DNA of 64,000 bases from Mizuhopecten yessoensis (Eukaryota): positions 709,018 to 773,017 of the forward strand of contig NW_018407733.1 of NCBI RefSeq assembly GCF_002113885.1, written 5' to 3'. Below the pieces are notes generated by a model that was given only the letters and a program-made list of their open reading frames with translations, was not told the DNA's origin and did no database searches. Shown here in pieces: positions 13,901 through 61,400 of this stretch (its first letter is position 1; every line of letters starts with the position of its first letter). Made by a program: the position numbers and the translations under genes.

Positions 13901-16833
13901 ATCAAATATGGCTGCCTGTCGGCCATGTTGTTTATCCGATCAGTCTCAAAAGTTGCCCTGTACAGCTAAGGACCAAGGGGAACCTACATATAAAATTTGC
14001 GAAAGATCCCTTTGGTACTTCTTGAGAAATACCGATAACAAGAATTATTTAAGGAGGGACGACAGACAGACCACGGACCACGGACGCAGGGTGATTTGAA
14101 TAGCCCACCATCAGATGATGGTGGGCTAAAATGTTCCTGTTGGTACTTCCCAAGAAATAGTGATAACAAACTTTCACTATCAAAATCAAATATGGCTGCC
14201 TGTCGGCCATGTTGTTTATCAGATCAGTCTCAAAAGTTGCCCTGAACAGCTAAGGACCAAGGGGAACCTACATAACAAATTTGAAAAAGATCCCCCAGGT
14301 ACTTCCCGAGAAATAGCGATAACAAACTTTCACAATCAAAATCAGAGACGGCCACCTAGCTGTCGGCCATGTTGTATATCCGATCCGTCTCAAAAGTTGC
14401 CCTGCACAGCTAAGGACCAAGGGGAACATAGATAAAATTTGCGAAAGATCCCTTTGGTACTTCTTGAGAAATACCGATAACAAGAATTGTTTAAGGACGG
14501 ACACGGACCACGGACAACGGACCACGGACCACGGACGGACCATGGACGCAGGGTGATTTGAATAGCCAACCATCAGATGATGGTGGGCTAAAAAAGAAGA
14601 AGAAAATAGGTACTCTCTCATTAAGGATACTATATATCATATACAGCATTGAGACTCTCTACCTTAAGTTAATTTGGATTACTGGGCTAAAGGGGCATGT
14701 TTTGTATTCACAAGATGATGATAAATGGGTGAAAATGATTAAAAACAAAGTCAATCTCTTATTAAAAAGGATAAAGGAACATTTACCTTTAATATTTGGA
14801 ATATCGATCCCTGTACCAAGTCAATATTGTAAAACAGAGGGACATGTGCCTCCTTTAGGGCAGTGGGGCTGGCCCAATAGTGGAAATAGGGACCAATCTT
14901 AAGACTTCCTTCAGTACGAGTAATGGGGTTTTTTAGTCCTTATATGTGATAGAAAAGGATCTCTGGACCAAGGAGATCCAACAGTGTACAGATGTAAGAT
15001 GGGTTAAGGGGCATGGCCCAACAGAAGAAACAGGTAGTACATCTCTAAAAGACTACTCCAACATACCAGTGAAGTAATGTTAACCAAATTTTGTAGTGTT
15101 GGGTAGGGCCACTTCTGAGAAGGACCCTAGAGGGGTACATGTAAGGACCCTAGAGGGGTACATGTTTAAGCACAGATTGAACGATTCCAACCTTTACAAT
15201 AGAACATCTTTTGATCACAGGGACTAAGTGGGCAGATTGCACAGGGTTGGGGACTTACAGTAGAAACCGAACAGTACTCTATTTTTTGTGCCTTTCCTAC
15301 CTTTTGGAAAATTACAATACATATTTGTTATAACCATTCTTTAAAAAAATGTTTGCGAAATCAAATATTATACCTACATAGTTCTCTCTACCAAGAGACG
15401 TATATACTACAGAGATAAGAAACTGCCTCTTTCTCATACCGAAGCGCACCCGTGTTGGGTAGTCTATTTGGATAACATTGATTTCATCAATGCTACAGCC
15501 TACGATATCGTTAGAGGATTTCCGAAACGCAAATTACAGCAGCCATTACTTGTCATTGTAAACAATTATAATGTTACTAAAATGAGAAAATCTGTATGTT
15601 AAATTCAGATTTTTCCTAGAAGGCCTTTTTCAACATAATTTGATAATTAATATTTTTTATATCGTTGTTCTTAATTTCAGCGCCATGCAATAATTACAAA
15701 ACTTGTTAATCAATATGAGAATATATCATGATTTAAGAATTATGAGAAGTTATCACTGGCATTCATTACATTATAACACTGAAAAAAATAGTCAAGATTG
15801 TCCTAAATACACTCCTTTTTTTCTATACAGTCAATTTTAAATCTGATCGGTAATTTATATTCTACTGTATATATCACGTCACGATGTGCGTTCTATACCT
15901 ATGGATTGCTTAAATTTATATACATCTATTTCAGTATTCAGATAGACTTTTATTATCATATAATTAATTGTTGCATTCCATAAATAAAAAAAATTGTCTC
16001 TGATACTTATAAAACTTGAAATGATAAAGTTTTAACAAAGTTTTGATCATACATTTTAACAAAACGACAGGTTTTGCAATTTCTACATATAAATCTTTCT
16101 TTTTGTTTTGTTCGTTTAACTGGTTCTCTAGATCTTTTAAGTGTAAATATTTTAACAAATTATGCTTACAATTTTTGCTGTATAATACTTAAGACAAATA
16201 GAAAAGGTTTGAATAATCAGTGAATAATCTTGAACACGAAGATGTCTTACAATGTTATAATTCAGGAATGTTGAGAAAAATATAATATTGTCCTGTGGTT
16301 TGTTTATCTGATAATAAGAAATAAACATTCATTAGAACGATCTGTACTCTTTGTTAAATACTATGCACGCGCATGTAACACCAGCTATGTTAGTAAGCTA
16401 TCATACATGTATGGGTACAGTACCTGATTTCAAAACTCCCGGGCTTTCCAGTATTTCCAGCGTTAAAATGAAAAGAAGCCCTGGATATATCAATTTCATC
16501 CAAAGGTAGAAAATCATGCTGATTACGGTAAATATATAGCTTGCACGTGCTATCTCCGAACACGCAGAAACGTTGTCTGTTTGTTTTGATTATACCACGT
16601 GTGAGGATTTGCAACCATCCGAAAAGTTTCGCTTCCGGGTTGACACAGCTACTTTCGCTCTGTCCCACCCTAGCCGCGGCTGATTGTGCGCCATTGTCAT
16701 TCGTATCATATTTGTCAGCGTCCGTCGAAGAATCCATGTCTGATATAATCTGTTCAGGAATATCAGAGGAATGTGGAGCAGACGACTGACCGTTTCTGTC
16801 GTCTACTCCGGGTCCTCCCACCGACGGATCCAT
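1932..16833 (-). CDS. TBC1D2B: TBC1 domain family member 2/2B-like Rab GAP (N-terminal PH domain + coiled coil); 5' part only, 3' exons with the TBC domain lie left of the window
   Basis: Seven GT-AG exons with consistent phases: 16833-16424, 8959-8815, 6771-6555, 3816-3587, 3129-3002, 2631-2500, 2181-1932. The translation has a PH domain (KLFGWLQ...RFCVF...KLYIYRN...PLDEIDISRASF...FEIR-SGGKEHLLDASDRHSMMYWLQELQKRR), then FTNLKSELQNAFSNIKG and a coiled coil (EEELQANREIVRLLQKEL...MLAAKDETIIKLT). This matches the TBC1D2/2B layout as I recall it. A versus B paralog cannot be decided. Confidence 0.85.
3866..3998. repeat. 45-bp tandem repeat, 3 copies
   Basis: ATGTTTGTATTACCATATCTGATCTTATAAACACCCTGTG.. 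occurs three times. Confidence 0.9.
4793..6274 (-). mobile_element. Helentron/HINE-like non-autonomous element with an internal ~480-bp duplication
   Basis: Terminal stem-loop AACAAGAGGCCCATGGGCCT. Subterminal inverted repeats GGTCACCTGA (~4818) and TCAGGTGACC (~6259) followed by TAAAAA. Tandem core repeats inside (5461 onward recurs at 5941). Confidence 0.65.
7260..7345. mobile_element. Tiny fold-back MITE-like hairpin
   Basis: TCATTCACCCCT (7260-7271) pairs with AGGGGTGAATGA (7329-7340). Inner arms TGAACTcTTCCAA / TTGGAAtAGTTCA. TTAA at the right end. Confidence 0.55.
10613..11935. repeat. 65-bp satellite, 20 full copies + partial, each unit containing a 14-bp inverted repeat
   Basis: Unit GGGAGTGTGATTG(C/T)TTCAGGTATCACCAGGGCCAGCAGTCACATTCCCCTCAGCCTTCACCATTA with an exact 65-bp period from 10613 to 11913. 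Confidence 0.97.
13039..14596 (-). mobile_element. Helentron/DINE-1-like non-autonomous element (HINE) with three tandem terminal modules
   Basis: Stem-loop AACAAGAGATCCCAGAGGGATCTTGTT + GCGCCCACC at the left end, ~150-bp core repeats, (GGAC/CCACG)n microsatellites. Palindrome TAGCCCACCATCAGATGATGGTGGGCTA at 13817-13844, 14101-14128 and 14563-14590. Confidence 0.7.
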
Positions 16834-19800
16834 GTTGTCCCGGAAGTTATATATCTTATGACAGATGAAGAAGGTCAAGAGGGGTCATTTCAAAATGACA
16901 AATGGGCAGCCAGATGTGTACATTTCTGTCCGATAATGCTGTTTTCTCGTAAAAAGCTTAAATACATCGTGTAAGGATTACAATTAAAAGGAAAATTCAA
17001 TGTTAATTATGAGCTAATTTATTCAGGAAGAAATGGTTACACAGAAACCTAAAATTACGTAATATATATATATGTAGATAAGAATCACGGACATAGATAA
17101 TTTGATAATCTAATTCCGTTGTAGAATCTACTAATTATGGGCTTTTATTTTGTGTCCCTGTTAGAACATACCGCTTTGCACCATAAGTAGATGTTTAACA
17201 CTTTTAAACCGAATTTCAACAGGTTTAAACTATTAATACAGAATTCAGTTACCGCTAATTCGTGTATTATTTTCGTTAAATATATTCCGATAAAAAAAAA
17301 GAGGCTCACCAACTCAGTCTGCATACTTTATCCACACCCAATACACATGTAAATAATGCTCGTCCCTATAAGCTGCCGAAACTCTTGAAATTCCACAAAA
17401 CTCTATATTAGGATACTAGTAAAATATGCAAATTTCTAAAGGCCCTCCCTGATATAATTTATAGAAGTATTGACAGATGAGGCTAGTGCATGGTATGTAC
17501 CATAATTTCCGTTAGGTTTACTTACAGCAGAAGGAAGTAACTATCTGCTGTTTATAATAAGAATTTACATATTTAGGTAAGGTTGTGATACGGACATTAT
17601 GATACAAACACAGTAGGAGGCCGACAGGTCGTAAATAACATATAAAATGCACCGCTGTCCAGTAGAACACCGGTGTTTGGTGTCGTTCCTCCAGTCATGT
17701 AATCAATTTATATTAAAATCACTCGGACGGCAGAACATACCGAGATTCCACACGTGCTTTACACCTGTGAAAAAATCCGGTATTCTGTCATACGAGTCGG
17801 CCTAACATATATACTTACTCAATGCAAACTATTTTTCGAAAAAATGTTTCCTTTTATTGATGATTAGCAGTATCTGGTTCCCACAAACAGATCGGCGAAA
17901 CTGAAGTGTCATTATACTGATTTAAGAAACCGTTTCATTAAAAAAATATTATCATAAAAAACCTAGTATGGCATTTTTTTTTAGATTTGATGACAACAAG
18001 AAATAATAAAGAACTTTCTAATTTAGCCAAATATCTAAACCAATGTCAAAAAAGGAGATGCAATACTGTTGCAGGTTAAAGGATTCACTCTCTACACTTT
18101 CTCTGGGATTTTATCGTATATGCATGGTCGGGAGATTGTATTCTATGTACTCTTATTTATATATATATATGTACTGTATAATTTGCACTGTATATATGCA
18201 CTGTACTGATAAACCGCAAGGTTTAAGGTAATAAAGAATGAATGAATAAAGATCAGTTCCGTGTGAACGGTATTTACTTTTTGAGGAAATCATATTTCAG
18301 GGAAAATATTTAATTACGAGGTATTTCCAAGAAATCCGGAATTGGGTCCGTTTGATTTTGATTCATCAATATTATAACGACTGGTTGATCAAACCCCATT
18401 GAGGAAACGATTAAAGTGTCGCGGATTTTACTATTTTTTAAAGCTATTGTAACTCACAGTAAGCCTAAAGTTATGTGTGTGGTTAAAGATGAACAAGACT
18501 TCAGAAAGTGCATGTCTGTCTTGCAGTACGGGATGATAATTTTTACCTGGCCTATTTAGTCTTTAACATTGAAGAAAATACTTTAAACTTTGCGCTGAAT
18601 ACATACAACTGGAATTGAAATTGATTTTAGAGGTACACAAAATTGCAAACAGTGGGATATAAATGGCCTAGCTCGCTACGATCGGCAACGGCGATTCGTG
18701 TTTTTTTTCTTTCTTTTACATCTTAAGACTTATTGGATTACATTTGACTGATATTTCCAATGGTCATTTTAGGATGATAAACATAAGAAAGTCAAAGAGA
18801 CCCATTTCTATAAATTTTACTGAAAGCTAAATTGCACTCTAAAAGGTATCGTCTAGACACCAGTTTCCGCGCGTTATGTATTTCCGCGCAGACATTTTAT
18901 CAAGCTATATCTCGTAACTACGTGACCTGCTGGACAAAACACAAGGATATTTTAGACGTTTGGCCATCGTCTGTAAACTGTACCGGAAGTTCGTCCGGAA
19001 AACATAAGATTTAATCACTGATTAAAAAACACGCATATACATGCAGTTTTGCTTAATGCTCTTTTCATTTTGCTCAAAATGAACCCATACCTTAAAAACG
19101 GCGATATATTTCATTCATGAACCTGTCTTTTTTGTAGTCTGACAAACGTACGAAAATGTCGTATGCAAATGAGGCCACATCTCCTCGCCGATTTTTTTCC
19201 ACTTCCGAAGAGCCAAGGAGACATTCTTATATCGATAAACAGTGTTTTCAATGAAACGTAAACCTTGTAATGCAATGAACTTCCAATTTTCACCAATTTG
19301 AAACAGAACAAAATGAGAAATTACTTACCATTAACCAAAACCGATATAAAACTGCAGAAAACAAAAAATAACAGATTCTATATTATAACTAAATAGATAT
19401 AATAAATAATTTTAAAAAAACCATGAATTCGTTCAATTTGACATCTTGAAATATAAATTAAAAAGGTGAAATTGAAAAAAAGTTGTTTTGATAATTAATT
19501 TGACGATCAAAGATATATTTTTTATTCCAAACGAAGCTTTTGTTCTTGCAGGTCATTGTAGAGAATTTCTTTTTATTGTATTCGAGTTATCTTTCTTTGA
19601 ACACTAAATCAAAGTAGACACACGGAAACATATGACGGCTACTTCCGACGGGAGAAATTTGCTAAACAATGTTTGTTCTGATTTTTTTTAAATACAGTTT
19701 TATGTTGCTATTTTTTTGTTTCCTTTAGTAGATTGTGTACATGTTTATGGCAGCCTTCCGTAATTTCAACAGTTTTCTGCCAATATGAGTACGAAATCGC

Positions 19801-36400: not shown

Positions 36401-38114
36401 CATTTTATAAAAAGGCAGAACTAAATTTACAATGATGGTGGTAAAATGAGAAGCTAAATCTTCAAAGGTAGATCTAAATTCTTTCACGTGTTTCAAAAGG
36501 CCATACTATAGCATTACAGCGGTTTCCTACGGATTAAACACACAGTTATTGTGATTTAATATAAAGCAATAAGTTTGGATTAAAGTAAGCTATGTAGTTA
36601 TGTCTTTCTGTCCAGGCAGGTGGATATGTATATAACGAATTAGTAAGTCTAACAAAGCTGTATTGTCTCCGTCTTTTATTGTCACGGTCGGATTTATACC
36701 AGCCCGGTTTCCTCAAGGTCTAATCAGCGTAACGTGTTGTTAATATAAATTTTGAAAATCCGATTTTTATACTTGTATCTGAAAACTTAAAAATAATTTT
36801 GTCTTTCTTCTTTTTATAAATCATTATGAAATCTTAAACACACTACTTTAGACTTGCATTTCAGCATATTTCTTAAAATATACCAGATTAAAATTTAAGA
36901 AAATTGTAGTCTAAGCTAACCAGGCCTTAAACAAATTGGCCCATGATTTGCGTGTATTAAGCTTTATAAGCTTAATTATATCTTGTAAAATATAAAAAAA
37001 ATCCAAATTTAAAAAAATTAAAATATAGAAGGAGGAGTAGAATTATGTGTAGTAGATCTGTGGGTGATTATTTTGATCTCTTGACGTGTACATTTTAATA
37101 TCGGGTGTGATAATTATGAAAATATGACTAATTTAAATTCTATTTTTTGGGCATTAAGCTATAATGAAGGTAGGTATGACCGATTACAGAGCATTGATTT
37201 TAGTCCAACTAAGCTAGCACGAACATTTTGACGTTGTGGTGATAATAGAAATAGAAATACTTCCAAACAGTATTGATATAATTTTGAACCTGATACTTAG
37301 ACTGGATAGTATTCCGTATGCTTTCTCATCTAATTCAGCTCTATGGGGAGTATAAAACGGAACTGATTTTGTAGTTTCTTCATGTCATCAATTTTTAAAC
37401 GTAAGAATAGAAAAGAACTTGGTTCAATGAGAACAAAAGGACGAAATGTTGTGTAGGGGCCATAGGAATAATATGAACCTCCATGACAAATGTTGTGATA
37501 TATGGTGGAGGGAACTGTTTACTTTGTTTCACTTTCTGCATTAATGAAACACTTTATATCAGCTAGTTGTTTCCTTACTCAGTATTTCTAGTAGATATTT
37601 TACGTAACCTTGATTGATTAACAGTGTTGGTGGAAAAACAGTGTTGATTGACTCTGTTGGTGGGATAACAGTGTTGGTGGAATAACAGTGTTGATTGACT
37701 CTGTTGGTGGGATAACAGTGTTCGAATTCACTCTGGCATGGTTTACAAAGAGTTTGAATATGTCTGTTGTAGCAAAACGTTGTAAAAGCTTATCTAAAGG
37801 TGGATTTGTACCTTTTAGGCACTTTTACTTTACCATGTATTCTACGTGTGTTTTGGAAAAACTGAAATAATTAATAAGTCATAACTGGGCGAAAAGGCCA
37901 CAAGTTGCAGTAAAGTGTTAACGTTGTTTGACTTTATTTTTGTAGGAATTGTTTTATGTCTGATCTATCTGATCTATCTCCATAGTGAAAACTGCCACCT
38001 TAGCTGTTGTTAGGACGTTAAACAAATAAAACCAAACCAAACCTAAGAAATAGTTTTTCTCTTTTCAGATATCCTATAAATGATATGCATTGATTCGGAA
38101 GGAAAAAGTGAAAC

Positions 38115-39785
38115 ATGGAAGTACAAAGACCAACGCCAGATTTTAAGAACTACAAAGACAAACGAGTAACCAACATCATCAACAAAGCTTCCCAGCAGCT
38201 GAGGATATCTGGTCTGGTCAGGAAGAATGCCGCACGTCGCTACATCACAATCACCAACAGCCATGCCTCCTTGAATGCGAATGCCCATGCAAAAGCCGTT
38301 GCTAAGGGTCTTTTGACTAAAGAACCAAGTAATCTGGACCGTCAAATGACCAAGGGGGCCACTAATCTAGAACGCCACATGGTAGTGAAAAAGACTGGTG
38401 AACTTGAATCTCCGCTTTCACAGAGACAAAGATTATACTTAAATGGAAATCACCAGACAGATGCGACGCGGGTATCAAGTTACCCGGAAATGACGTATAG
38501 GCGTATAGTTCATGCACGATCAATGGCGCGAATGGCCACCAGGACCGATTTTCTAAAAGCCAGAGAGCTGACAGAAGAATTGGATCAGAATAGGACCTTA
38601 ACATTTTCATTGACTAAATCTGATGAACCTGCAATCAGAGTTCGACCAGTTATATCTAGGGAGTCCAGTAAACTAGACAGCAATATGAAAGTTGCCATCA
38701 ATAGATATGTTACCAGTATGTCACCGAAACGATCCGATACAATACCGAGTAGGTCAGACACTTCGCTCAGCAGGTCAGACGTAATGCGAAGTACTGACCA
38801 GCCCATGACTCCGGCCACTACCTCCAGGAGAAACAAAACGCACCCAGAGACTCACCGAGAATCTACTATATTATATAACAGCAGACGACCGACAAAACAT
38901 GCTAAGTCTTACTTGAAGCCTGTACTTCCGAGAATGTTCTCTGGAAATGTTCCATTTTTGTTCAAACTGAATGGACCAATTCTTCTGACTGCACCTCATG
39001 GTATTAAGTTATGGCGCGGTGGCACGGATGGAAGGAAGAAGAGAATACACTACAGAGAGATTTGGTCCACGGAAATAGTCCTAAAATTGGCCGCCCACAT
39101 CAACAAGTACATGGGTATTCCAGCTAGCTTTATGATCTGGGATAGAAGAATTGCTGCTCCGCTCGACCACAAAAACCTCGACCCAAATTACCTCACAGAA
39201 GAACAACTTGCTTTGTCGCCATGGCATGAAGCTCTTCTTCAGTTCAAGCGCTTCGGTAAACTAAACAAATGTCCTCTTCTTCACATCGATGTCCATGGGA
39301 AGAAAAATCGAAAGACAAATCTAGATGTCGACTTTGGCTTCAAAGCACTGGAAACTCGCTGGGAGGACCAAGGTTTTGTAGGCTGGGTGAAGTCTGAAAC
39401 AGAATCTTCATTCAGTAGGTTGTTTGACCTGCCTTGCTGTGAAACTAATGACGATACAAAATACACTACAAATGTCAACCCTAGTCTTTGTGGTGACTGG
39501 GGAGGTGACCTCTACACCATGACGTGCCAGTCGGTGTGTATGGGGGTCCCAGCCTTCCAACTGGAGATTCCAAGGAGTATACGAACGCATCTGATAGATG
39601 ACGAAGTTTTCATGAACAAGTTTGCAAAATGTATTGTAGATATTTATCGGACTTGCATCTCTCTGAATTCTGACGAGGAGTGCGACAGTAGAGTCAGGGA
39701 GAACAGAATACTTACTGATCATATCGAAAAACTGTATAACGAACACCTTAAAGTTCAAAAAGTGGCACGGGAAAAACAGATATGA
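38115..39785 (+). CDS. 556-aa protein: basic disordered N-terminus + Zn-dependent hydrolase domain (N-formylglutamate amidohydrolase / poly-gamma-glutamate hydrolase-like fold)
   Basis: Uninterrupted ORF, strong start AACATGG with in-frame stops upstream, 5'UTR acceptor TTTTCAG ending at 38068, AATAAA at 39849-39854. Motifs LLTAPHG, REIWSTE, DPN, LHIDVHG, DVDFG, FQLEIP. The CDS is well supported; the fold assignment is from motif memory. Confidence 0.8.
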   Translation: MEVQRPTPDFKNYKDKRVTNIINKASQQLRISGLVRKNAARRYITITNSHASLNANAHAKAVAKGLLTKEPSNLDRQMTKGATNLERHMVVKKTGELESPLSQRQRLYLNGNHQTDATRVSSYPEMTYRRIVHARSMARMATRTDFLKARELTEELDQNRTLTFSLTKSDEPAIRVRPVISRESSKLDSNMKVAINRYVTSMSPKRSDTIPSRSDTSLSRSDVMRSTDQPMTPATTSRRNKTHPETHRESTILYNSRRPTKHAKSYLKPVLPRMFSGNVPFLFKLNGPILLTAPHGIKLWRGGTDGRKKRIHYREIWSTEIVLKLAAHINKYMGIPASFMIWDRRIAAPLDHKNLDPNYLTEEQLALSPWHEALLQFKRFGKLNKCPLLHIDVHGKKNRKTNLDVDFGFKALETRWEDQGFVGWVKSETESSFSRLFDLPCCETNDDTKYTTNVNPSLCGDWGGDLYTMTCQSVCMGVPAFQLEIPRSIRTHLIDDEVFMNKFAKCIVDIYRTCISLNSDEECDSRVRENRILTDHIEKLYNEHLKVQKVAREKQI

Positions 39786-41276
39786 AAAGGCTACAATGTA
39801 CACATAATGTTACCGACGGAAGCGTGGCAATAGTAAAATAGAGAAACAAATAAAGTGAATTTGTAGCAAATGCCAATCAGATTTTATACGGATAAAACAA
39901 AACGCACAAAGTCATCATTAGGCAGAAGAAAAAATACACTACCATGTTTTACTTTTTTTATAGTATGAGCAATTATGGCAAATTAAATTATTATGTTGAA
40001 GTTCAAAATCAACTACAGTGACCAATGAGAACATGTCTTCAATGAAAGTTATTAGATCATCTGTTACTATTAAATAGGAGTCTTTCTTTATTTTCTTATA
40101 CAATTGAAAAGGACACTAGAATGTATCACAACATCACAACAAATGAGTCGGTTCTCAGTTTTATCTCAACAAAAGCCTAGATTTTCAATTTTCGGAAAAT
40201 AAGATCTGTTTTAATATCTCAACAGAATACTCATATAATCTTTCACTGCTTTTGGGGCGAGGTAGAAGAGAATGGGGGTCTCAACCCAAAACAGGGAGAG
40301 ATGATCAAATTTGTAATCATGGTATGTAGGATATTCTATAGGAGGGTGTAGAATTTGAGTCAGACCCAAGGTGAGAATTTCCATATCCCACATACCTATG
40401 CAATGATTGACAAGCTTGTGCAATAATGGTCCTGAGGTGTTGTCACTTGCCGGCATTAAGTTTTTCAGTCAGTCAAATGATGTTTCGATGGGCTTGATTG
40501 TGACGTCATAATACAACGCCATCATCTGATTTTTGGGACAAGTTTATTTTACATACACAGAGGTAGGAGAAACAACTGTCCAAGGCAAGACATTCCATTA
40601 TCTCTTACACCTCAACAAGAAGATTCTCTGTTACGTTTTAACAGGAAACTAGATCCTCTTATACAACTCAACAGGATACTACAATTCTGTTATACCTCAA
40701 AGAGATATCCTCTAAATCCAAGTGTTCTGGTCTCCATACACCTATCTTCTCGTTAGAATTTGTGATGACAACATCGAAAACTTTATTTATGCGACACCTT
40801 GCAGATGATGCAAGTGAACTAGTCTGATGTCGTAGGTGGAGATTGAAGAAGTTTGAAATTTGGAGTTGCTCCTATGTAATCTTTAAAGGGCAGGTATAAG
40901 TCTAGTGACAAGTAAGGTTTTATACCTGAAGCCAATCAAATATCATACAGCGAGCCTTCAATTTTGTAATGACATATTCCAGGAGGGGCTGAGAAGATAG
41001 GAGTATTGAGAGCAGAATTCTAAAATTTTGAGGACACTCGAGGAGAAGCTAGATTATCTTTTACACCATTTGTGGAACAACAATCTGTTACATTTCTATG
41101 TTTGACGATAACTCATCTCACCTTAGTGAAAGGTTTTTTACCCGATTTCAACTGTCAAAACAAACATGATTCGATTTTACCTGGTAATAATAAACAAAAT
41201 ACTTAATACCTTTACTAAAGACTTTATTTGAAATTATCATTGGCCCTAAAATTAAAATATAAAAAAAAAGTTTATA

Positions 41277-44200
41277 TCAGTGTTCAGAAAAGTATTTAAT
41301 TATTTGTTTTGCTGTTTGAGAACTCCATCCATGAACGGAGAGTACACCATCTACTGCCTCTATATAAGGCAGCAGGAAGTCCTTGCCAATCTTTTTGGCA
41401 TCAAAGTCTTTATCACACTCTGTGTCCTTTGTTTTATTTACTTGCTCCTGGTAGTACCAGTAACACAGCTCACCACCATACATCATCCCCAATAGTATTG
41501 TGTCATTCAGGATGCCTGCAACAACACAAAAAAGATTCAATCCATACTTCCAATCGATTTTTTATTGAATAAAGCATGATTTATGTAATACAAATTTATA
41601 TTTTAAGGTTCAGCTTGAGGTTTTGCCCAGTGCTGAACATCAAAAGTCTTATCCAAAGGACTGAAATTTCACTTGTCTGATACACACATTGATTGTCTTT
41701 CAATGCAAACAGAGAAATGTCAACCTTCATGATAAGATGTTTAAGTTCAGCAATCCACAAAGCCTAGCTAATACCAAGCCACACAATTCCTGCCATAAGG
41801 TTAAGTTTATTACAAACGGCACTACAACAGTGTAAGCTGTGTAACCTGAGAGCCTCTGGTACAACACATATTGGTAAGAGTAGACACCATGTCAGAATAC
41901 ACTGGTCATATCACATATATTTGATCAAATATGGGATTACAACATATTACTGAATTAGACAACAGCATGATGGTAAATACTCGGGTCTCAGATTTCACTC
42001 CATGTGCTGCAGTGACCCCATCAGTGAATACTTACCCATGTCGATAAGCTGTAGTGTGTCATCTTTGTCTGGTGATTCTTCCTTGTCCTTACCTGGCGGT
42101 GGTGAAGGAAGTATGCTCTTTAACTGAATAATTCCTTCATGTAACAACTGAAAATATAAAGTTCAAGCCATTTATCCACAAATTCAAAGAAAAACAACTG
42201 CAGTTTACATTCCCTTGGATTAACTGGAGACTTCTCTGTATAGTATCCTGTCATATTGATTAGCATCACGTTACTTGATACTGAATTGACAAGAGGACTT
42301 TCCCTTTTACTTTATCGTAGTGATATGTTTTCATCAGGAAACTTTTTTAACATCCTTCCCTGATGACCTTGACTTTTAACCTTTGACATAGAAAAGCAAT
42401 AGGCACTTTCCTATGGTCAGAAAATTGATGCAAGTACAATACTTCTTTTAACTGTGCACCCACAAGCATGGAAAGAGTGACATTGGTCGCACAGATAATG
42501 AAGTTGTTCTGTTATATTTTGTTCTGTATGTTTTACACTTATTGAAATTCAATAGCTTTTCCTTTTTTTCTTAAAAAAATTAATTCAGTTTACAATTTAA
42601 GGCTGAAAATATGCTTAAAGGGGAAAAAATGTTTATAAAAAAAACAATCAGCAGACTATACATGGCACTCTATTGTAAAACCTTGGATTCGTGTTACTAG
42701 ATCATAAAAGTCATCAGAGGTAAAATTAAAAAAAATACAACACTAAATAATTGTCAAATGTGTCAAAGTTGTCATATGCTAAATATATACACAGACATTT
42801 GTTTCATAATAACTTCTGACCTCTGAACCTGCAGGTGTTAATTCTAATCTGTCAATAGATCACACAATACAGCCTTCACAATGACTTGCAGTTCCTAAAG
42901 AATTTACATATGAACTAATTTTAATACTGAATAGTGTAACAAAACTTAACCTAAGAAAGATAACTCTCTCCTAAAGAATTACTGAACAATGTTACAAAAT
43001 ACTTCAAACCCAAGATAATTCTCTTCAAGAAATTTGGTAAACCTTAAATCAACATACGTCCAAATGTAACTTATTTTTTCATCAACACTTCTTAACTTTG
43101 GATGAAACAATAACATCTCCATTGTAACACCAGTCAATCTGACATTACCTGGTGTCAATGTGACATTACCTGGTGTCAATGTGACATTACCTGGTGTCAA
43201 TGTGACATTACTTGGTGTCAATGTGCTTCGCCACATATTTGAAATTGTAAAGGAATACATGTACATGTATATCTTAAGTTTGTTTTTCCATCTGAGAAGC
43301 TAAAAGTTTTGGGATATACGTGACAAGAGGTCCAATGGGCATGTATTGCTGAACTGTATATATATCTCATTCGTTATCTTGAAAATAGGTGAAAGGTCAC
43401 ATATACCTACTTCCTCAAAAGTGGATCAAGTTCATTCATTTGAGTAACAACTTTTATCCCAGTATGCTTATTGTAAATTTTCATGAACCTAGGCATATTG
43501 GCTGTTCAGAAAAAGTCTTTAAACACATTTTACCATGATAGTTGGTCAAGGTGATTCATTTGAACAAACTTGACAAGTTGATTGGTGTATGCAGAACATC
43601 TGTCTTTCTCACCTGTATAAAACTGGTGTCTATTTTGTCGGCCCTTTTTGGATCGTCTTTAACTGTTTTACAATACATGTAAAGCAGTGCTCCCCTCCTC
43701 CAAACAAGGCACTCATTAATCTCGGAACCAAGAACATCTGCAACCTATCAAAAGGCAAGAATTCAGCATGCCTACCTTGCAATAGTTACATATCACCTGG
43801 TAATTAATACTTGCCTTTAGAATTATGGCAATAAACACCCATCTACAGAGACTTTGTATACCTGGTATAGCATAAGTGTCATTTAAGTCTTCCTAATATA
43901 GATAAATTTCCAAGTTAACTTTACAGCTTAAGTACACAGTTTTATCTAAAAAGTACAACAAAGTTATCCTTATTCAGCACAAGTAATCAAGTTTATCAAT
44001 TATATTACTTACCTCTTTCTCTGGTATACACTTTTTGGAGAGTTCTGTTATTTGATCAAAACTACCTGGAATAGGAAAAATGAAAAGACTGATCCAAGGA
44101 TGTGCACATCAATGATGAGTCCAACTTCTAAAACAGACACTGGGCGGCAGTATTTAGACAACTGTCATTCCCTCTATATCTATATATCATCGAAATGATG

Positions 44201-47200
44201 GAACCTTGCACTTTCCAATCCAAGAGCATTTACACAATCTAAAATAAAATTGTTGGTTTTCCGTTCTCTTACTATCCTAGGAGAGTGAAATACAACATTT
44301 ATATTTTGGCTTCAAAAATGCTTTATAGAATTATACAAATGATACTTACAATACTGCATGTTAAAAATTCTCTTTAGGTTTTGTAGTGCATACTGTTTAT
44401 ATTTCCAAAATTACTTACCAGGTAGTTGACATATTTTATATTTAATAAATGCACCTTTGTGGTTATAAACAATTTTGCAGTAAAAAATATTTGTCATTGA
44501 GTTGTGTATATTTATATTTTTGGCCTAGATGAATTTCTCATACTGTTTTTTTAACGCAACAGTTTTTTCTGACTTTTAATGACTGACTTATACAAAATAT
44601 TTCTTCACACTTACAGAAGATTTTATGAATTCTCTCCCTTGCATTACTCTCGGGGAACTCTCCATTGACAAGCTGACATTCTTCGTGGTAAGTGTAATCC
44701 AGCATTGCCTAAATAAAATGTAAACTAAAGAAACTTATTCAATGTCTTGATTAATGGCAACTGTATTTAATAACTTTTATTGAACCATATCAATCTCATT
44801 TTCAAAAGTGAATTTGTAGCAGCTAGTGTATCATAAGGCACAATATTTACACAGCATTTGACAAATAACCCAAAACAACCATATTTCTAGCAAGCATTCA
44901 ATGTTAAGAGTTTTTTTGCCCCAGGGCAAAAAAAGACAGTGTCCACAGATGATGGGGCCCCTTTATAGCATCATCTCACTGTTATGTCATAACCTGGACA
45001 CAGTCACATGACACTCCACCTGGTTACTGAAATGTCATAACCTGGACACAGTCACATGACACTCCACCTGTTCAATGAAATGTCATAACCTGAACACAGT
45101 CACATGACACTCCACCTGGTCATTGAAATGTCATAACCTGGACACAGTCACATGACAGTCCACCTGGTTACTGAAATGTCATTATCTGAACACAATCACA
45201 TGACACTCCACCTGTTCACTGACATGTCATAACCTGGACACAGTCACATGACACTCCACCTGTTCACTGAAATGTCATAATCTGAACACAGTCACATGAC
45301 AGTCCACCTGGTTACTGAAATGTAATTATCTGAACACAATCACATGACACTCCAACTGTTCACTGAAATCTCATAACCTGAACATGGTCACATGACACTC
45401 CACCTGGTCACGGAAATCTCATAACCTGAACATGGTCACATGACACTCCACCAGGTCACTGAAATGTCATAACCTGAACACAGTCACATGACACTCCACC
45501 TGTTCACTGAAATGTCTTTACCTGAACACAGTCACATGACACTCCACCTGTTCACTGAAATGTCATAACCTGAACATGGTCACATGACACTCCACCTGGT
45601 CACATTATTCTGACAACAGGATAACCAGAGGTGACCTGGGAGACACCGTCCAAAAGGAAGAGAAAGTAAGGAGGAATAGTAAAAGTGTAGCTGCGGGAAC
45701 CGTAGCTTCTATGTCCATTTTTTTTTTTATTAATATTGTTATCAGACTATGAGTGTTGCACTTAGAGTAGCAGATCAATTTTGGTAAATATGGAAGGACC
45801 ATGGTGAGCTTATGCCATACCGCAGCGTCCGTCGTCCGTCCGTCAACTTTTCCTTTAAAACACTACTAGTCATGAAGGAGTGAGAATATTTTGACCAAAT
45901 TTGGTCAGAAGCATCCTTGGGGGAAGGGGAACAAATTTTGTATAAATGGTGAGTCTGGCCCCCCTGGGGGCTGAGGGGCGGGGTCCAATAGGGGAAATAT
46001 AGCAAATTCTTTAAAATCCTTCTTCTTCTGTAGGAATGAAAAGGATTTAGTCCATATTTGGTGTGGAGCATCCTAGGGTAAAAGGGAACAAATTTTGTAT
46101 AAACGGTGGGTCTCACCCCCCTGGGGGCTGAGGGGCGGGGCCCAATAGGGGAAACATAACAAATTCTTCAAAATCCTTCTTCTTCTGAAGGAATAAAAGG
46201 ATTTGGTCCATATTTGGTGTGGAGCATCCTTGGGTAAAGGGGAATCAATTTTGTATAAACAGTGGGTGTAGCCCCCCTGGGACCTGAGGGGTGGGGCCCA
46301 ATAGGGGAAATAGAGGTAAAACCTTTATAATCCTTCTTCTACCATAGGGAATAAGGGATTTTATCCTAATTTAGTCTGGAGCATCCTTGGGCAAAAGGGA
46401 CTCAATTTCATATAAACAGCGAGTGTGGCCCCCCTGGGGGCAGAAGGGAGGATGGGCCCAATAGGGGAAACATAGCAAATTCTTCAAAATCCTTCATCTT
46501 CTGTAGGAATGACAGGACTTGTCCAAATTTGGTATGAAGCATCCTTAGGTAAAAGGGAACAACTTTTGTATAAACGGTGTGTCTGACCCCCTGGAGGCAG
46601 AGAGGCGGGGCCCAATGGGGGAAATAGAGGTAAAACCTTTAAAATCGTTCTTCTACCATAGGGGTTAAGGGATTTTATCCTAATTTAGTCTGGAGCATCC
46701 TTGGGCCAAGGGGACTCAATTTTGTATAAGCAGTGGGTGTGGTCTCCAAGGGCGGGGCCCAAAAAGGGAAATAGAGGTAAACCTTTAAAATCCTTCTTCT
46801 ACCATAGGGATGAAGGGATTTTTCTTCCCAATTTGGTCTGGAGGATCTTGGGCAAAATTAAGGGACTCAATTTTGTATAAACAGTGAGTGTGGCCCCCGC
46901 CCCCTGGGGGCAGAAGGGTGGGTCCGATAGGGGAAACATAGCAAATTCTTCAAATACCTTCTTCTGTACGAATGACTGGATTTTATCCTTATTTAGTCTG
47001 GAGCATCCTTGGGCCAAGGGGACTCAATTTTGTATAAACGGTGGGTATGACCCCCTAGGGGCATAGGGGTGGGGCTCTGTTTGAAGTTTGTTCTCGCTAT
47101 ATCTCAAGTACTGGATGGATCTTTCTGAAATTTCATATGTACTTACAGCACCTACCATGGAGTGCTATATCTTTACTTCATACCAATTATTTACAACATA

Positions 47201-58400: not shown

Positions 58401-61400
58401 GTCTTTTTAAGATCACGCAGGAAGCTGGTGAATTCATGATTACCTTCCCGTATGGATATCATCAGGGTTACAACCATGGTTTTAATTGTGCGGAGTCCAC
58501 AAACTTTGCTACAGAGAGGTGGATTGAGTATGGAAAGAGGTGTTTGCAGGTGAGATTAATAGAGCGTGGATGGAGTGCCAAGAAATCCCCCCTCTCTTCC
58601 CAAATATTTAAAAATATTTAGCATTTTGGTAATTGAAATAATTCATCAGAAAAACAATTGAAGTTCATGAAATAATAGAAAAACAATTTTCAATTCTCTA
58701 TCAAACGTGACTTATTTGCTATTTTTTTGTTAGTGTAAGTGTCGGAAAGATGGTGTCAAGATCAGTATGGACACGTTTGTGATGAGATTCCAACCAGAAC
58801 GCTATGCTCTATGGAAAGAAGGGAAAGACATAGCTCCTCACCCAGAGGATGACCAGAGCAAGCTCTATAAACACAGGTGGGTGACGGCAAAATCGGAATT
58901 ATCGGATAAGTTTTTGAAGGAATTACCAGATTTAAATGAAACCTGTTTAGTATACTCTCTACCCAAATCCATACCATGTTGCTATCTGATCGGCTGATAG
59001 TTTCCATGTGATATCCTTTTGAAGCAATGAATGGATTTAAATTAAATTTGTATGGTATACTCGCTACCTAGATCTTATACATTACTGTGTGGAATAGTAT
59101 ACAGTTATAGAATGGATATGAGAGAAATAGCACATTTATGGTCCCCCGAGGTGAAAAACTATTTCCAAAGGGTGACCATAAATTTGCTCTTTCGGGGAAT
59201 TACCCGTTCTATAACTAAAGCTTATTTGAATTATATAAATCTACATTGTGCATATTGATGTTTAAAACAAGATAATATTTTGAGTTTTTGTGCTTTCAGG
59301 GACAAAAGCATAGCCAATAACTCTGGTACAGTGTCAAAGAGACATCCAATTTCTAAGTCCACATCACCAAAGAAAAAGGATAGCGTGAAGGAGGAAAAGG
59401 AGGAATCAGAAACATCTAAGGTTAAACAAGAAGAGGAAAACGCTGATGAAAGTTGTATTGAAGGAGAAAAGGATGATGAACAAAGCACTGGTAGTACATC
59501 TGACGAAAAAGGTAGTAATTCAGACAGTTCGAAAAAGAAAATTGCTATGTACTTGAAGGATGTGAAGAAGGCTTCTGCCCCTACCAAAAAAGCTGCCCCT
59601 AGCTCATTTCAGGCAGCGTTTGAATCACTCGTTACCAATAACAAAACGTTTCCAAAACCACCAGTTCATATTGTTGATGGTGTTCCTGTTAAAGTGAAAC
59701 AGCGTAAGCGGAAATCTGAGGAAAGTAAGATTAAGATAAAAAATGAACCTATTCCTACTGAAAGCGGTGATGCTTCCTCGCTGAATGCAGAGCTGACTGT
59801 ATCTGAAAATAAGACAATGCAAAATGGTGAAACAAAACAACAGATAGTAGTAGTCCCTAAGAAGAAATCCAGGAAAGATGGAAATTCTCCACCGAAGCGG
59901 AAAAAGCAAGTTCAAAATCTACACCCTTCTTATCCTTTCCTACCTCTCAACCATCCATCATCTACCACGTCTGTGACAAAAGGAATGATAACAAAGGAAG
60001 AATCAGATTTTAACAGACTTAACTTTCTCATGCCAACTATTCGATGGATCAAACAGCAACAAATGTTACAAAACTGTAGCAACAAGACCATAGGATACAC
60101 CAGTGGGAAAAGTGAAGAGATACCATTTGCCCATTCCTCTGGTGTTTCATTTGAGGATTTATTGGCTGCACAAAACAGAGACATCAAGTGCGAGCCTCAC
60201 GTTGTGTCAAATTCTAAAGGAAACCCAGTCAAAGCACATGGATCAATGCTTCATAACTATTCTCGGCCGGGTACTATAATGCCCCCAAGCACAACAATGA
60301 CTGTCAATACAGCAACTAAATCAACGGAACCCAAGGAGGAAACAGAGAGTGAATCAGCTCTGGACCTGTCTGTTGCTACAACTACGAGTGCTACAACATT
60401 ATCTCCAGAATCTCTTAAGATAAGTCAGACTACTGCTTCTCCTGTCAGAAAGCAAATAGCAGCACACTTTTCTGGTACCAAGAACTCACCTTCTGTAAGT
60501 TCTGAGAGGGAACCAATGGCAGGCCCCTCGAGTGCAAGTTCCAATGTGGATTCTCAGGCTATTTGGCCAACACCAGAACAGCTAAAACAGAGCATTAAAC
60601 TCACCGGACCTCAACACAATTTGTTCAACAGCTTTAATCAGGCTTTTGAATTAGCACAAAGCATGTTGAACAAGAAGCGTGATGGACAAGAACAGACCAA
60701 AGCCAGTGAATCCCCACCTTCACCCAAGACCTCAACTTCAACTGATACAACAGAGTGTTCACCCTCTTTTGAAAGTGCTCCACTTTTGCAGCAGTCACCT
60801 CAACAGAAAACGGGTACTGATAAAACTCCTCCTAGAAAACCTTCCACGGGTGATGTTAGTTATCCAGGCCTTTCTCAATCCCCAACAGGTGGAGTGCATT
60901 CATTGACATTTTCAAAATTAGTTAGCCAAAGTCAAAAAGAGCAGAAGAAAATATCAGAGTCTCCCAAGCCACATACAACAAGTCTGTTACAGCATAAACC
61001 CTTATTACCCTCACCAACCCATGGATCAGTATTTGACAATTCTAGAAACCCATCAACAACATGTTTATCACGTCCTCTCGGAGCTGGTGCTGAGTCACTA
61101 GTTCGCCATTCATCTCCCTCACATGCCATTGGCAGTCCAAACATGTATACTCCTTTATCAAGTATAGCTCAACATTCTCAGCAACAGAATCTTCTTCTTC
61201 AGTCTGCCAATCAACAACAGCAGACTTTTTTAGTCAATATACCTGTGATGCAAACGCCGCAGCCTACTGGTGGTATTACTGGCACTCCGTGTACAACTGC
61301 CACTACTAGGGCTTCACAGGTACTCCCTCTCGCATGCGGCCAAACTGTAGAAACAGTTGATCGTGGGGGAGTTGCTAAGACTAACAGTAAACTGACTGTC

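What the first reader, a model, noticed from the sequence alone, without database searches (positions are those of the whole stretch)
38115..39785. Intronless animal gene with a formylglutamate-amidohydrolase / poly-gamma-glutamate-hydrolase-like Zn domain: candidate horizontally acquired glutamyl hydrolase
Seen: one 1.67-kb coding exon among intron-rich neighbours, but with a spliced 5'UTR (acceptor 38068) and AATAAA, so it looks like a genuine host gene. Residues ~285-510 carry APHG...E...DPN...HIDVHG...DFG...QLEIP. Established: a PH..(E/D)..DxH..QxE spacing is typical of the Zn-exopeptidase-fold FGase/PghP families, mostly microbial or phage enzymes that cleave acyl-glutamate bonds. I know no standard animal gene of this form. 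Inference: an old horizontal acquisition or retroposed gene fused to a ~270-aa Arg/Lys/Ser/Thr-rich disordered arm. A basic arm on a glutamyl-hydrolase fold suggests an acidic polymer substrate such as polyglutamylated tubulin or bacterial poly-gamma-glutamate.
Basis: partly seen in the sequence, partly recalled or inferred. Interest (0 to 1): 0.75.

Follow-up and report, generated by a model that had tools for sequence, protein, structure and literature searches.

The report
Unnamed glutamate-type zinc hydrolase in molluscs
This scallop gene encodes a likely zinc-dependent hydrolase from a previously unnamed enzyme family, found otherwise in marine protists and at least one giant virus and, among animals searched, only in some molluscs; where the molluscs got it and what it cuts remain open.

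Summary
An in-frame stop 6 nt upstream of the ATG confines the coding sequence to one exon.

The fold prediction is right. Residues 272-556 model well (pLDDT 87). They match FGase-family Atu2144, phage PghP, YndL and an FGase best (Z 12.3-13.8). Profile alignments put invariant H295, E315, H394, E484 and R490 on the known metal ligands, catalytic Glu and carboxylate-binding Arg. No Pfam, NCBIfam or PDB sequence model detects the protein, so this is an unnamed third branch of that superfamily.

The origin story needs correcting. Its relatives are not bacterial or phage proteins. The profile finds 732 cluster representatives; named or context-checked ones are protists, one giant-virus contig, and molluscs. 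Many protist members fuse the domain to BPL_N and GGACT (gamma-glutamyl cyclotransferase) domains, which points to glutamyl-amide chemistry.

In molluscs the gene is single-copy in the scallop, single-exon, syntenic with RIMOC1 in scallop and oyster, under strong purifying selection, and monophyletic. An ancient transfer is plausible, but no donor can be resolved. The basic arm is real and disordered. The substrate is untested.

The parts
38054..38068 (+). Acceptor-like polypyrimidine tract plus AG (proposed 3' splice site of a 5'UTR intron)
   Evidence: The only strong acceptor-like site in 37600-38114. Use as a splice site was not verified.
38069..38114 (+). Proposed 5' leader within the coding exon. 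Holds two upstream ATGs (38080, 38085) and an in-frame TGA at 38109.
   Evidence: The TGA rules out an upstream coding exon in frame. Start context is AAACATGG.
38115..39785 (+). Complete coding sequence, 556 aa plus TGA, on one exon
   Evidence: single copy in the genome; dN/dS 0.044 against another scallop
38115..38927 (+). N-terminal basic, S/T-rich disordered arm (residues 1-271). Short conserved motifs RVSSYPEM (38469-38492) and KVAINRY (about 38685-38705).
   Evidence: pI 10.7, net +26; pLDDT <50 for residues 1-264; dN/dS 0.10; the arm is basic in all nine other bivalve orthologues tallied; R119 nearly invariant
38928..39782 (+). Catalytic domain (residues 272-556), FGase/PghP-like Zn-amidohydrolase fold
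   Evidence: AF2 pLDDT 87.2, pTM 0.89; VIA Z 13.8 to 2odf, 12.8 to 3a9l, 12.5 to 5onj, 12.3 to 2q7s; Foldseek 3a9l E 3e-6; dN/dS 0.011
38997..38999 (+). H295, predicted metal ligand 1 (APHG motif, at the end of the first core strand)
   Evidence: Invariant in 64 sequences. Aligns to PghP H40 and the invariant FGase His.
39057..39059 (+). E315, predicted metal ligand 2, following a hairpin insertion of about 15 residues
   Evidence: Invariant. Aligns to the invariant Asp of the FGase D..T motif. The E315-E320 spacing equals the PghP E45-E50 spacing; that second mapping is an inference.
39174..39191 (+). NLDPNY loop; family-specific invariant D356 and N358, probably substrate-binding
   Evidence: Invariant. 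Occupies the region of PghP H78/T80/S81, which are not conserved here.
39279..39302 (+). LHIDVHGK strand: D392 and H394 (predicted metal ligand 3), G395, K396
   Evidence: D392, H394 and G395 are invariant. H394 aligns to PghP H103, and D392-x-H394 aligns to FGase D.HS.
39558..39584 (+). QLEIPRSIR: E484 (predicted general base) and R490 (predicted carboxylate anchor)
   Evidence: Q482, E484 and R490 are invariant. hhalign places E484 on PghP E165 and R490 on R171 (E 1.5e-4). Roles in PghP/PghL come from PMC6506827.
39771..39782 (+). Conserved extreme C-terminus EKQI
   Evidence: Invariant in 15 bivalve sequences. [EDG][KR][QM]I recurs in protist members. Function unknown.
39849..39854 (+). AATAAA poly(A) signal candidate
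   Evidence: 64 nt downstream of the stop codon

Best explanation
The ORF is a live, single-copy, single-coding-exon nuclear gene of a scallop; the protein clusters with Pecten maximus LOC117325526. It has two parts. The first is a disordered, strongly basic arm of about 270 residues that occurs only in bivalves. The second is a 285-residue catalytic domain from a previously unnamed family in the FGase / PghP (MEROPS M86) zinc-amidohydrolase superfamily. Shown: the fold; the conservation of the H295 / E315 / H394 / E484 / R490 set, in register with known metal ligands and catalytic residues; purifying selection; synteny; and the family's distribution. Inferred: a metal ion bound by H295, E315 and H394 activates water; E484 acts as general base, as Glu165 does in PghP and Glu270 in carboxypeptidase A; R490 holds a substrate carboxylate. 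The enzyme would then hydrolyse an amide bond next to a glutamate, either an N-acyl-glutamate or a gamma-glutamyl linkage. The glutamyl assignment rests on three things: the two nearest enzyme families both act on such bonds; the PghL Arg171 equivalent is retained; and protist members repeatedly fuse the domain to GGACT (gamma-glutamyl cyclotransferase) and a class-I-amidotransferase-like BPL_N domain. The N-terminus does not look like a signal peptide (by eye only), which suggests an intracellular enzyme. The basic arm probably tethers it to an acidic partner.
For: ORF and motifs. No Pfam, NCBIfam or PDB sequence hit. Domain model pLDDT 87, pTM 0.89. Best structural matches are 2odf (Z 13.8), 3a9l PghP (12.8), 5onj YndL (12.5) and 2q7s FGase (12.3), above M14 carboxypeptidases and Amidase_3 at about 10-11. 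hhalign of the family against PghP: global probability 90%, E 2e-7; against FGase: 25%, E 8e-4; the FGase-PghP calibration pair gives only 7%. Sub-threshold PF05013 or PF05908 hits in divergent members. Thirteen invariant positions across 64 members include the whole proposed catalytic set. GGACT fusions in 8 of 64 and BPL_N fusions in 8 of 64 members. The Atlas holds bacterial BPL_N+FGase fusions of similar shape. dN/dS is 0.011 for the domain and 0.10 for the arm. Single copy in the genome. Synteny with RIMOC1 in oyster and scallop. Active-site roles in PghP/PghL: PMC6506827.
Against: No biochemical data exist for any member. The E315 to PghP E45 mapping needs a gap shift relative to the hhalign output. 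The specificity residues of PghP (H78, T80, S81) and most of the FGase SRxxxDxxR motif are not conserved, so the substrate may not be a glutamyl compound at all. Domain fusions indicate a pathway, not a substrate. Expression and UTR splicing in the scallop were not shown. Absence of a signal peptide was judged by eye, not by a predictor.
Confidence: 0.7

Rival explanations
1. Origin, option A. The gene entered the mollusc stem lineage by horizontal transfer from a eukaryotic microbe or a giant virus, as an intron-free, domain-only copy. Bivalves later added the basic arm.
For: The only animals found are pteriomorph bivalves and Haliotis, across three word-index searches and one exhaustive profile search. 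Named members otherwise come from Discoba, Cryptista, Stramenopila, CRuMs, Picozoa and an Apiculatamorpha entry, and the Atlas shape search adds a mostly chlorophyte cluster. No opisthokont other than molluscs appears. Giant viruses encode domain-only members, which offers a vector. The coding sequence is intron-free in scallop, oyster and abalone. Molluscs form one clade (SH-aLRT 91-99).
Against: No donor is resolved. The AU test rejects neither mollusc+virus (p 0.70) nor mollusc+diplonemid (p 0.64). Absence from other animals rests on searches with limited sensitivity, and most hits are unnamed. The ORF's GC content (44%) was measured, but codon usage was not compared with other host exons.
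Confidence: 0.5
2. Origin, option B. This is an ancient eukaryotic gene inherited vertically into animals and lost almost everywhere except some molluscs. Its lack of introns reflects an old retroposition or intron loss.
For: The family occurs in most eukaryotic supergroups, consistent with an early eukaryotic origin. Within molluscs the tree follows taxonomy, and microsynteny with RIMOC1 is kept between oyster and scallop. In one tree the molluscs sit apart from all protists rather than nested in a protist lineage.
Against: It requires many independent losses: fungi, choanoflagellates, non-bilaterians, deuterostomes, ecdysozoans, other spiralians and many molluscs. None of these appeared.
Confidence: 0.35
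3. Function rival. The enzyme is a protein deglutamylase, for example for tubulin. The basic arm binds acidic polyglutamate tails or microtubules, and the domain trims glutamates, independently of the M14 CCP deglutamylases.
For: The arm is strongly basic in all nine other bivalve orthologues tallied, despite poor sequence conservation, and it is under purifying selection. The fold is also shared distantly with CCP5 (Z 10.5). The N-terminus does not look like a signal peptide (by eye).
Against: The arm is absent from Haliotis, protist and viral members, so it cannot define the family's core function. Nothing links the gene to cilia or tubulin. Giant-virus copies are hard to fit with tubulin trimming.
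Confidence: 0.1
4. Function rival. The enzyme has one of the two known activities: either a poly-gamma-glutamate depolymerase aimed at bacterial capsules (defence or digestion), or a true N-formylglutamate amidohydrolase of histidine catabolism.
For: PghP and FGase-family proteins are the closest structures. R490 matches the PghL carboxylate anchor Arg171.
Against: The PghP substrate-groove residues H78, T80 and S81 are not conserved. Only the Ser of the FGase SRxxxDxxR motif is kept. The N-terminus does not look like a signal peptide, which a capsule-degrading enzyme would be expected to need (by eye). From general knowledge, animals catabolise histidine through formiminoglutamate and FTCD and do not need HutG. 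Both family HMMs fail on the scallop protein.
Confidence: 0.1
5. The domain is a non-catalytic pseudoenzyme or binding module.
For: No activity has been demonstrated for any member.
Against: All predicted metal and catalytic residues are invariant over 64 sequences from molluscs, protists and virus-like members. The domain's dN/dS is 0.011.
Confidence: 0.05

Closest known systems
PghP / PghL (YndL) poly-gamma-glutamate hydrolases (Pfam PF05908, MEROPS M86; PDB 3a9l, 5onj)
   Same: Same fold (Z 12.5-12.8). Profile alignment puts H295, H394, E484 and R490 on H40, H103, E165 and R171. A shared QLE..x.R block and [ST]E[IL] helix start.
   Different: No PF05908 hit for the scallop protein. About 80 residues longer, with a hairpin insertion between the first His and the Glu ligand and a long C-terminal helix. 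PghP substrate residues H78, T80 and S81 are replaced by a D-P-N loop. Eukaryotic and giant-virus hosts rather than Bacillus or Staphylococcus phages and bacteria. The scallop protein carries a basic arm.
N-formylglutamate amidohydrolase family (HutG; Pfam PF05013; PDB 2q7s, 2odf Atu2144)
   Same: Best structural match overall (2odf Z 13.8, 2q7s Z 12.3). hhalign aligns PH(G/A), E315 with the Asp of D..T, PWH..L, D.H(G/S), two invariant glycines and the catalytic Glu. Divergent members give sub-threshold PF05013 hits. Bacterial BPL_N+FGase fusions mirror the protist BPL_N fusions.
   Different: The scallop protein gives no PF05013 hit even at E<=10. Only the Ser of the FGase SRxxxDxxR motif is kept. 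hhalign probability is only 25%. Invariant H312, W342, D356, N358, Q482 and R490 are specific to the new family.
M14 metallocarboxypeptidases, including the cytosolic carboxypeptidase CCP5 (tubulin deglutamylase)
   Same: Same broad Zn-peptidase fold class (Z 10.5-11.3). The catalytic Glu is at the equivalent strand end (PMC6506827).
   Different: No HxxE motif. Lower structural scores than FGase and PghP. No sequence or profile similarity was detected.
Amidase_3 N-acetylmuramoyl-L-alanine amidases (CwlV, AmiC, CD27L)
   Same: Fold-level similarity, Z 9-10.4.
   Different: Weaker match covering only the core. No motif correspondence was examined beyond the fold. They act on peptidoglycan, which the host lacks.

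Membership tests
FGase / PghP Zn-amidohydrolase superfamily (fold level) | Alpha/beta Zn-peptidase-like fold, with best structural matches to FGase and PghP proteins | tested here: met
   pLDDT 87 model; Z 13.8, 12.8, 12.5 and 12.3 to 2odf, 3a9l, 5onj and 2q7s, above M14 and Amidase_3
FGase / PghP Zn-amidohydrolase superfamily (fold level) | His / acidic / His metal triad plus a catalytic Glu at a strand end, all conserved | tested here: met
   H295, E315, H394 and E484 are invariant in 64 members and align to the PghP and FGase counterparts. Model secondary structure places H295, H394 and E484 at the C-terminal ends of strands.
FGase / PghP Zn-amidohydrolase superfamily (fold level) | The ligands converge on one metal site in three dimensions, and metal is bound | not testable with these tools
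   Model coordinates are not exposed and no metal-aware modelling was available. This needs coordinates or an experiment.
Pfam PF05013 (FGase) | Scores above the family's gathering threshold (28.9 bits) | tested here: not met
   No hit for the scallop protein at E<=10. The best relatives score 18-23 bits.
Pfam PF05013 (FGase) | The SRxxxDxxR motif that is invariant in the PF05013 members sampled here | tested here: not met
   In the hhalign alignment only the Ser (S338) is kept; R becomes F339, and D becomes N or D.
Pfam PF05908 / MEROPS M86 (PghP) | Scores above the gathering threshold (22 bits) | tested here: not met
   No hit for the scallop protein. Divergent relatives score 16.5-17 bits.
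Pfam PF05908 / MEROPS M86 (PghP) | Mutationally defined residues H40, E45, H78, H103, E165 (PMC6506827), plus T80 and R171 | tested here: inconclusive
   H40, H103, E165 and R171 have invariant aligned counterparts. E45 maps only after a gap shift. H78 and T80 have no counterpart.
M14 carboxypeptidases | HxxE...H zinc motif | tested here: not met
   The sequence after H295 is GIKLWRGG, with no Glu at +3. Structural Z is lower than for FGase and PghP.
   No other animals were found. Molluscs are monophyletic, but their sister group is unresolved.

The most novel reading that the evidence does not exclude
A gene for an FGase/PghP-like amidohydrolase, carried by giant viruses, was captured by the mollusc stem lineage. 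Bivalves then fused it to a basic disordered arm, producing a CCP-independent class of enzyme that removes glutamate modifications from acidic intracellular polymers such as polyglutamylated tubulin. The conserved C-terminal EKQI tail acts as an auto-inhibitory or targeting element.
Probability: 0.07. Interest if true: 0.8.

Novelty: new variant of a known kind. Interest (0 to 1): 0.52.

Why it matters
It defines a sizeable enzyme family that current family models do not detect: 732 cluster representatives at E<=1e-3. Members link marine protists, a giant virus and two mollusc groups. Recurrent fusions to GGACT and a glutamine-amidotransferase-like domain suggest an undescribed eukaryotic route for breaking gamma-glutamyl or acyl-glutamate bonds. 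For animal genomics it is a clean candidate for an ancient gene acquisition into molluscs: resident, syntenic, intron-free in its coding sequence and strongly constrained. Giant viruses are a concrete possible vehicle. The bivalve-specific basic arm makes a directly testable prediction that the enzyme is tethered to an acidic partner.

Tried and rejected
1. Direct sequence annotation gave nothing. Pfam, NCBIfam and PDB phmmer returned nothing at E<=10. PDB hmmsearch with profiles A2 and A6 also returned nothing. PHROGs gave only scattered single hits.

2. No bacterial or phage member of the family was found. The pattern scan of GTDB genomes found no relative and tblastn against 50,697 phage records found no match. 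Both have limited sensitivity. Two IMG/VR pattern scans were also negative, even though a giant-virus member exists, so those scans under-detect.

3. The 5'UTR splice and expression could not be tested. No contig encodes exactly the window protein. L015 is from another scallop and looks genomic. Oyster contig L106 is colinear with the oyster genome. No paper mentions the LOC identifiers.

4. No donor could be identified. Three trees disagree on where the molluscs attach. AU tests cannot reject mollusc+virus or the control grouping mollusc+diplonemid, so the data have no power on this point.

5. The bacterial promoter/terminator scan is irrelevant to a eukaryotic gene, and its counts were at the shuffle level.

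6. I first recalled from memory that the family's DPNY loop corresponds to the FGase DxNR motif. hhalign did not support this, so I dropped it.

7. Contamination was rejected. The gene lies between animal genes and is syntenic with RIMOC1 in two species.

Full report
**Observation.** The window holds an uninterrupted ORF at 38115-39785 (+) of 556 codons. An in-frame TGA lies 6 nt before the ATG, so no upstream exon can contribute coding sequence. The start context is AAACATGG. One strong acceptor-like site (TTTTTCTCTTTTCAG) ends at 38068, and AATAAA lies 64 nt after the stop. Whether 38068 is used as a splice site could not be tested. The protein falls in the same 90% cluster as Pecten maximus LOC117325526, which is also 556 aa.

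**It is a resident, constrained host gene.** It is single-copy in the 988-Mb assembly. The Crassostrea virginica and Haliotis rufescens orthologues are also single coding exons: 1638 nt for 545 aa and 990 nt for 329 aa. In the oyster the gene lies next to RIMOC1 on the opposite strand, with a TBC1D2-like gene beyond. Translated oyster exons of RIMOC1 hit window 41289-41522, 43610-43744 and 44571-44708 on the minus strand, and the TBC1D2-like first exon hits 16411-16881. Against another scallop (L015, 81% nucleotide identity), dN/dS is 0.011 for the domain and 0.10 for the arm. dS is near saturation, so these ratios are approximate.

**Fold.**
- Pfam, NCBIfam and PDB sequence searches find nothing, even with family profiles.
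- An AlphaFold2 model of residues 272-556, built on 19 homologues, is confident (pLDDT 87.2, pTM 0.89).
- An exhaustive structural comparison ranks FGase-family Atu2144 (2odf, Z 13.8), phage PghP (3a9l, 12.8), YndL/PghL (5onj, 12.5) and Ralstonia FGase (2q7s, 12.3) first. M14 carboxypeptidases (up to 11.3) and Amidase_3 enzymes (about 10) follow.
- Foldseek agrees, with 3a9l at E 3e-6.
- The ESM Atlas feature and shape searches also point to PF05013 proteins.

**Active site.** The PghL paper (PMC6506827) gives the PghP/PghL zinc ligands as His40/41, Glu45/46 and His103/102. The catalytic Glu165 is equivalent to carboxypeptidase A Glu270, and Arg171 anchors a substrate carboxylate.

I built a PghP profile from phiNIT1 pghP and eight phage homologues. 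I built an FGase profile from ten genuine PF05013 hits in bacterial genomes.
- hhalign of the 64-member family alignment against PghP gives probability 55% locally (E 1.2e-4) and 90% globally (E 2e-7).
- Against FGase it gives 25% (E 8e-4 over 128-195 columns).
- The accepted relatives FGase and PghP score only 7% against each other.

The alignments make the following placements:

| Scallop residue | PghP counterpart | FGase counterpart |
|---|---|---|
| H295 | H40 | invariant His |
| E315 | E45 (see below) | invariant Asp of D..T |
| D392-x-H394 | H103 (for H394) | D.HS |
| E484 | E165 | invariant Glu |
| R490 | R171 | none identified |

The E315 to PghP E45 mapping is my inference. It rests on the matching five-residue spacing to the next conserved Glu (E315-E320 here, E45-E50 in PghP) and implies a hairpin insertion of about 15 residues after the first His.

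All of these residues are invariant in 64 members. Model secondary structure puts H295, H394 and E484 at the C-terminal ends of strands. PghP's groove residues H78, T80 and S81, and most of the FGase SRxxxDxxR motif, are not kept. Divergent members give sub-threshold hits to PF05013 and/or PF05908 and to no other family consistently. The domain is therefore a third, unnamed branch of this superfamily. Spatial convergence of the ligands could not be measured, because coordinates are not exposed.

**Family and context.**
- A profile search of 1.84 billion cluster representatives finds 732 members at E<=1e-3 and 110 at E<=1e-30.
- Named members are diplonemids (Flectonema, Rhynchopus, Lacrimia, Namystynia, Diplonema), Picozoa, Diphylleia, Willaertia, Guillardia, Triparma and Apiculatamorpha. 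The Atlas shape search adds a mostly chlorophyte cluster.
- Unnamed multi-domain members lie on contigs with adaptin, cullin, TCP-1 and RING genes, so those contigs are eukaryotic.
- Of 64 long members, 8 carry BPL_N and 8 carry GGACT. Typical architectures are BPL_N-domain-GGACT or BPL_N-GGACT-domain.
- The BFVD search gives an in-family giant-virus protein: a Megaviridae environmental sample, E 1.7e-20, TM 0.68/0.84, 28% identity.
- Member P0167 lies on a 311-kb contig with an NCLDV capsid, VLTF3 and ribonucleotide reductase. The AT-rich, virus-like members keep every catalytic residue.
- No bacterial or phage member was detected with the limited scans available.

**Animals.** Only pteriomorph bivalves (scallops, oysters, pearl oysters, mussels) and three Haliotis species appear. 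Molluscs form one clade (SH-aLRT 91-99), with Haliotis sister to the bivalves and a taxonomy-like order within the bivalves. Their attachment to the rest of the tree is unstable. AU tests reject neither mollusc+virus (p 0.70) nor mollusc+diplonemid (p 0.64). Ancient transfer and vertical descent with massive loss therefore both remain open. I favour transfer modestly, because no other opisthokont has the gene and a viral vehicle exists.

**Arm and tail.** Residues 1-271 are basic (pI 10.7, net +26), as in all nine other bivalve orthologues tallied (pI 9.7-10.8), despite low sequence conservation. In the full-length model residues 1-264 have pLDDT below 50, with two weak helices. Haliotis, protist and viral members lack the arm. 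The extreme C-terminus EKQI is invariant in bivalves, and [EDG][KR][QM]I recurs in protists. It is unexplained.

**Mechanism and verdict.** The best reading is an intracellular, metal-dependent amidohydrolase acting on a glutamate-bearing amide, either an acyl-glutamate or a gamma-glutamyl bond. In bivalves, a basic disordered arm would tether it to an acidic partner. Shown: the fold, the conserved residues, selection, synteny and the family's distribution. Inferred: metal binding, the substrate class and the role of the arm. Its account of a microbial or phage origin is replaced by a protist and giant-virus family.

Noticed in passing
window 41289-41522, 43610-43744, 44571-44708 (minus strand): Exons of RIMOC1 (PF17716 in the oyster orthologue) lie immediately downstream and convergent to the gene. 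The same arrangement occurs in Crassostrea virginica (L001).
   Followed up: partly
window 16411-16881 (minus strand): Matches the first exon of the oyster PH + RabGAP-TBC (TBC1D2-like) gene. In the oyster that gene lies beyond RIMOC1, so the neighbourhood is rearranged but retained.
   Followed up: partly
window 38080 and 38085: Two upstream ATGs lie in the putative 5' leader. One opens a 2-codon uORF. The other is an out-of-frame ORF running past the main ATG. This may mean translational control, if the leader is as proposed.
   Followed up: no
window 39771-39782 and family alignments A1, A6, A7: The C-terminal tetrapeptide EKQI is invariant in bivalves, and [EDG][KR][QM]I recurs in diplonemids, Picozoa and metagenomic protists. 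Haliotis has lost it. It is neither a canonical PTS1 nor a PDZ class I motif.
   Followed up: partly
L110 (ENA ERZ10646538 contig_32115), about 14356-15438: The giant-virus contig that carries the family member also encodes a DAHP-synthase-family protein (PF00793), near the capsid and VLTF3 genes.
   Followed up: no
L109 8073-10722: BPL_N, the core domain and GGACT are called as separate adjacent ORFs on a eukaryotic contig. This probably reflects one intron-split three-domain gene.
   Followed up: no
P0018, P0039, P0198 (Haliotis): Abalone orthologues are only 73-75% identical between congeneric species and lack both the arm and the C-terminal motif. They appear to evolve much faster than the bivalve copies.
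   Followed up: no
window 10001-12000 and 60001-62000: Local GC peaks (0.46 and 0.45, against a background of about 0.35). The second has a strong negative GC skew (-0.18). Neither was examined.
   Followed up: no
L015 2382-2623 and window 41271-41513: A block 85% identical between two scallop genera overlaps the last RIMOC1 exon. The spacer between the two genes is about 620 nt in L015 and about 1500 nt here.
   Followed up: no
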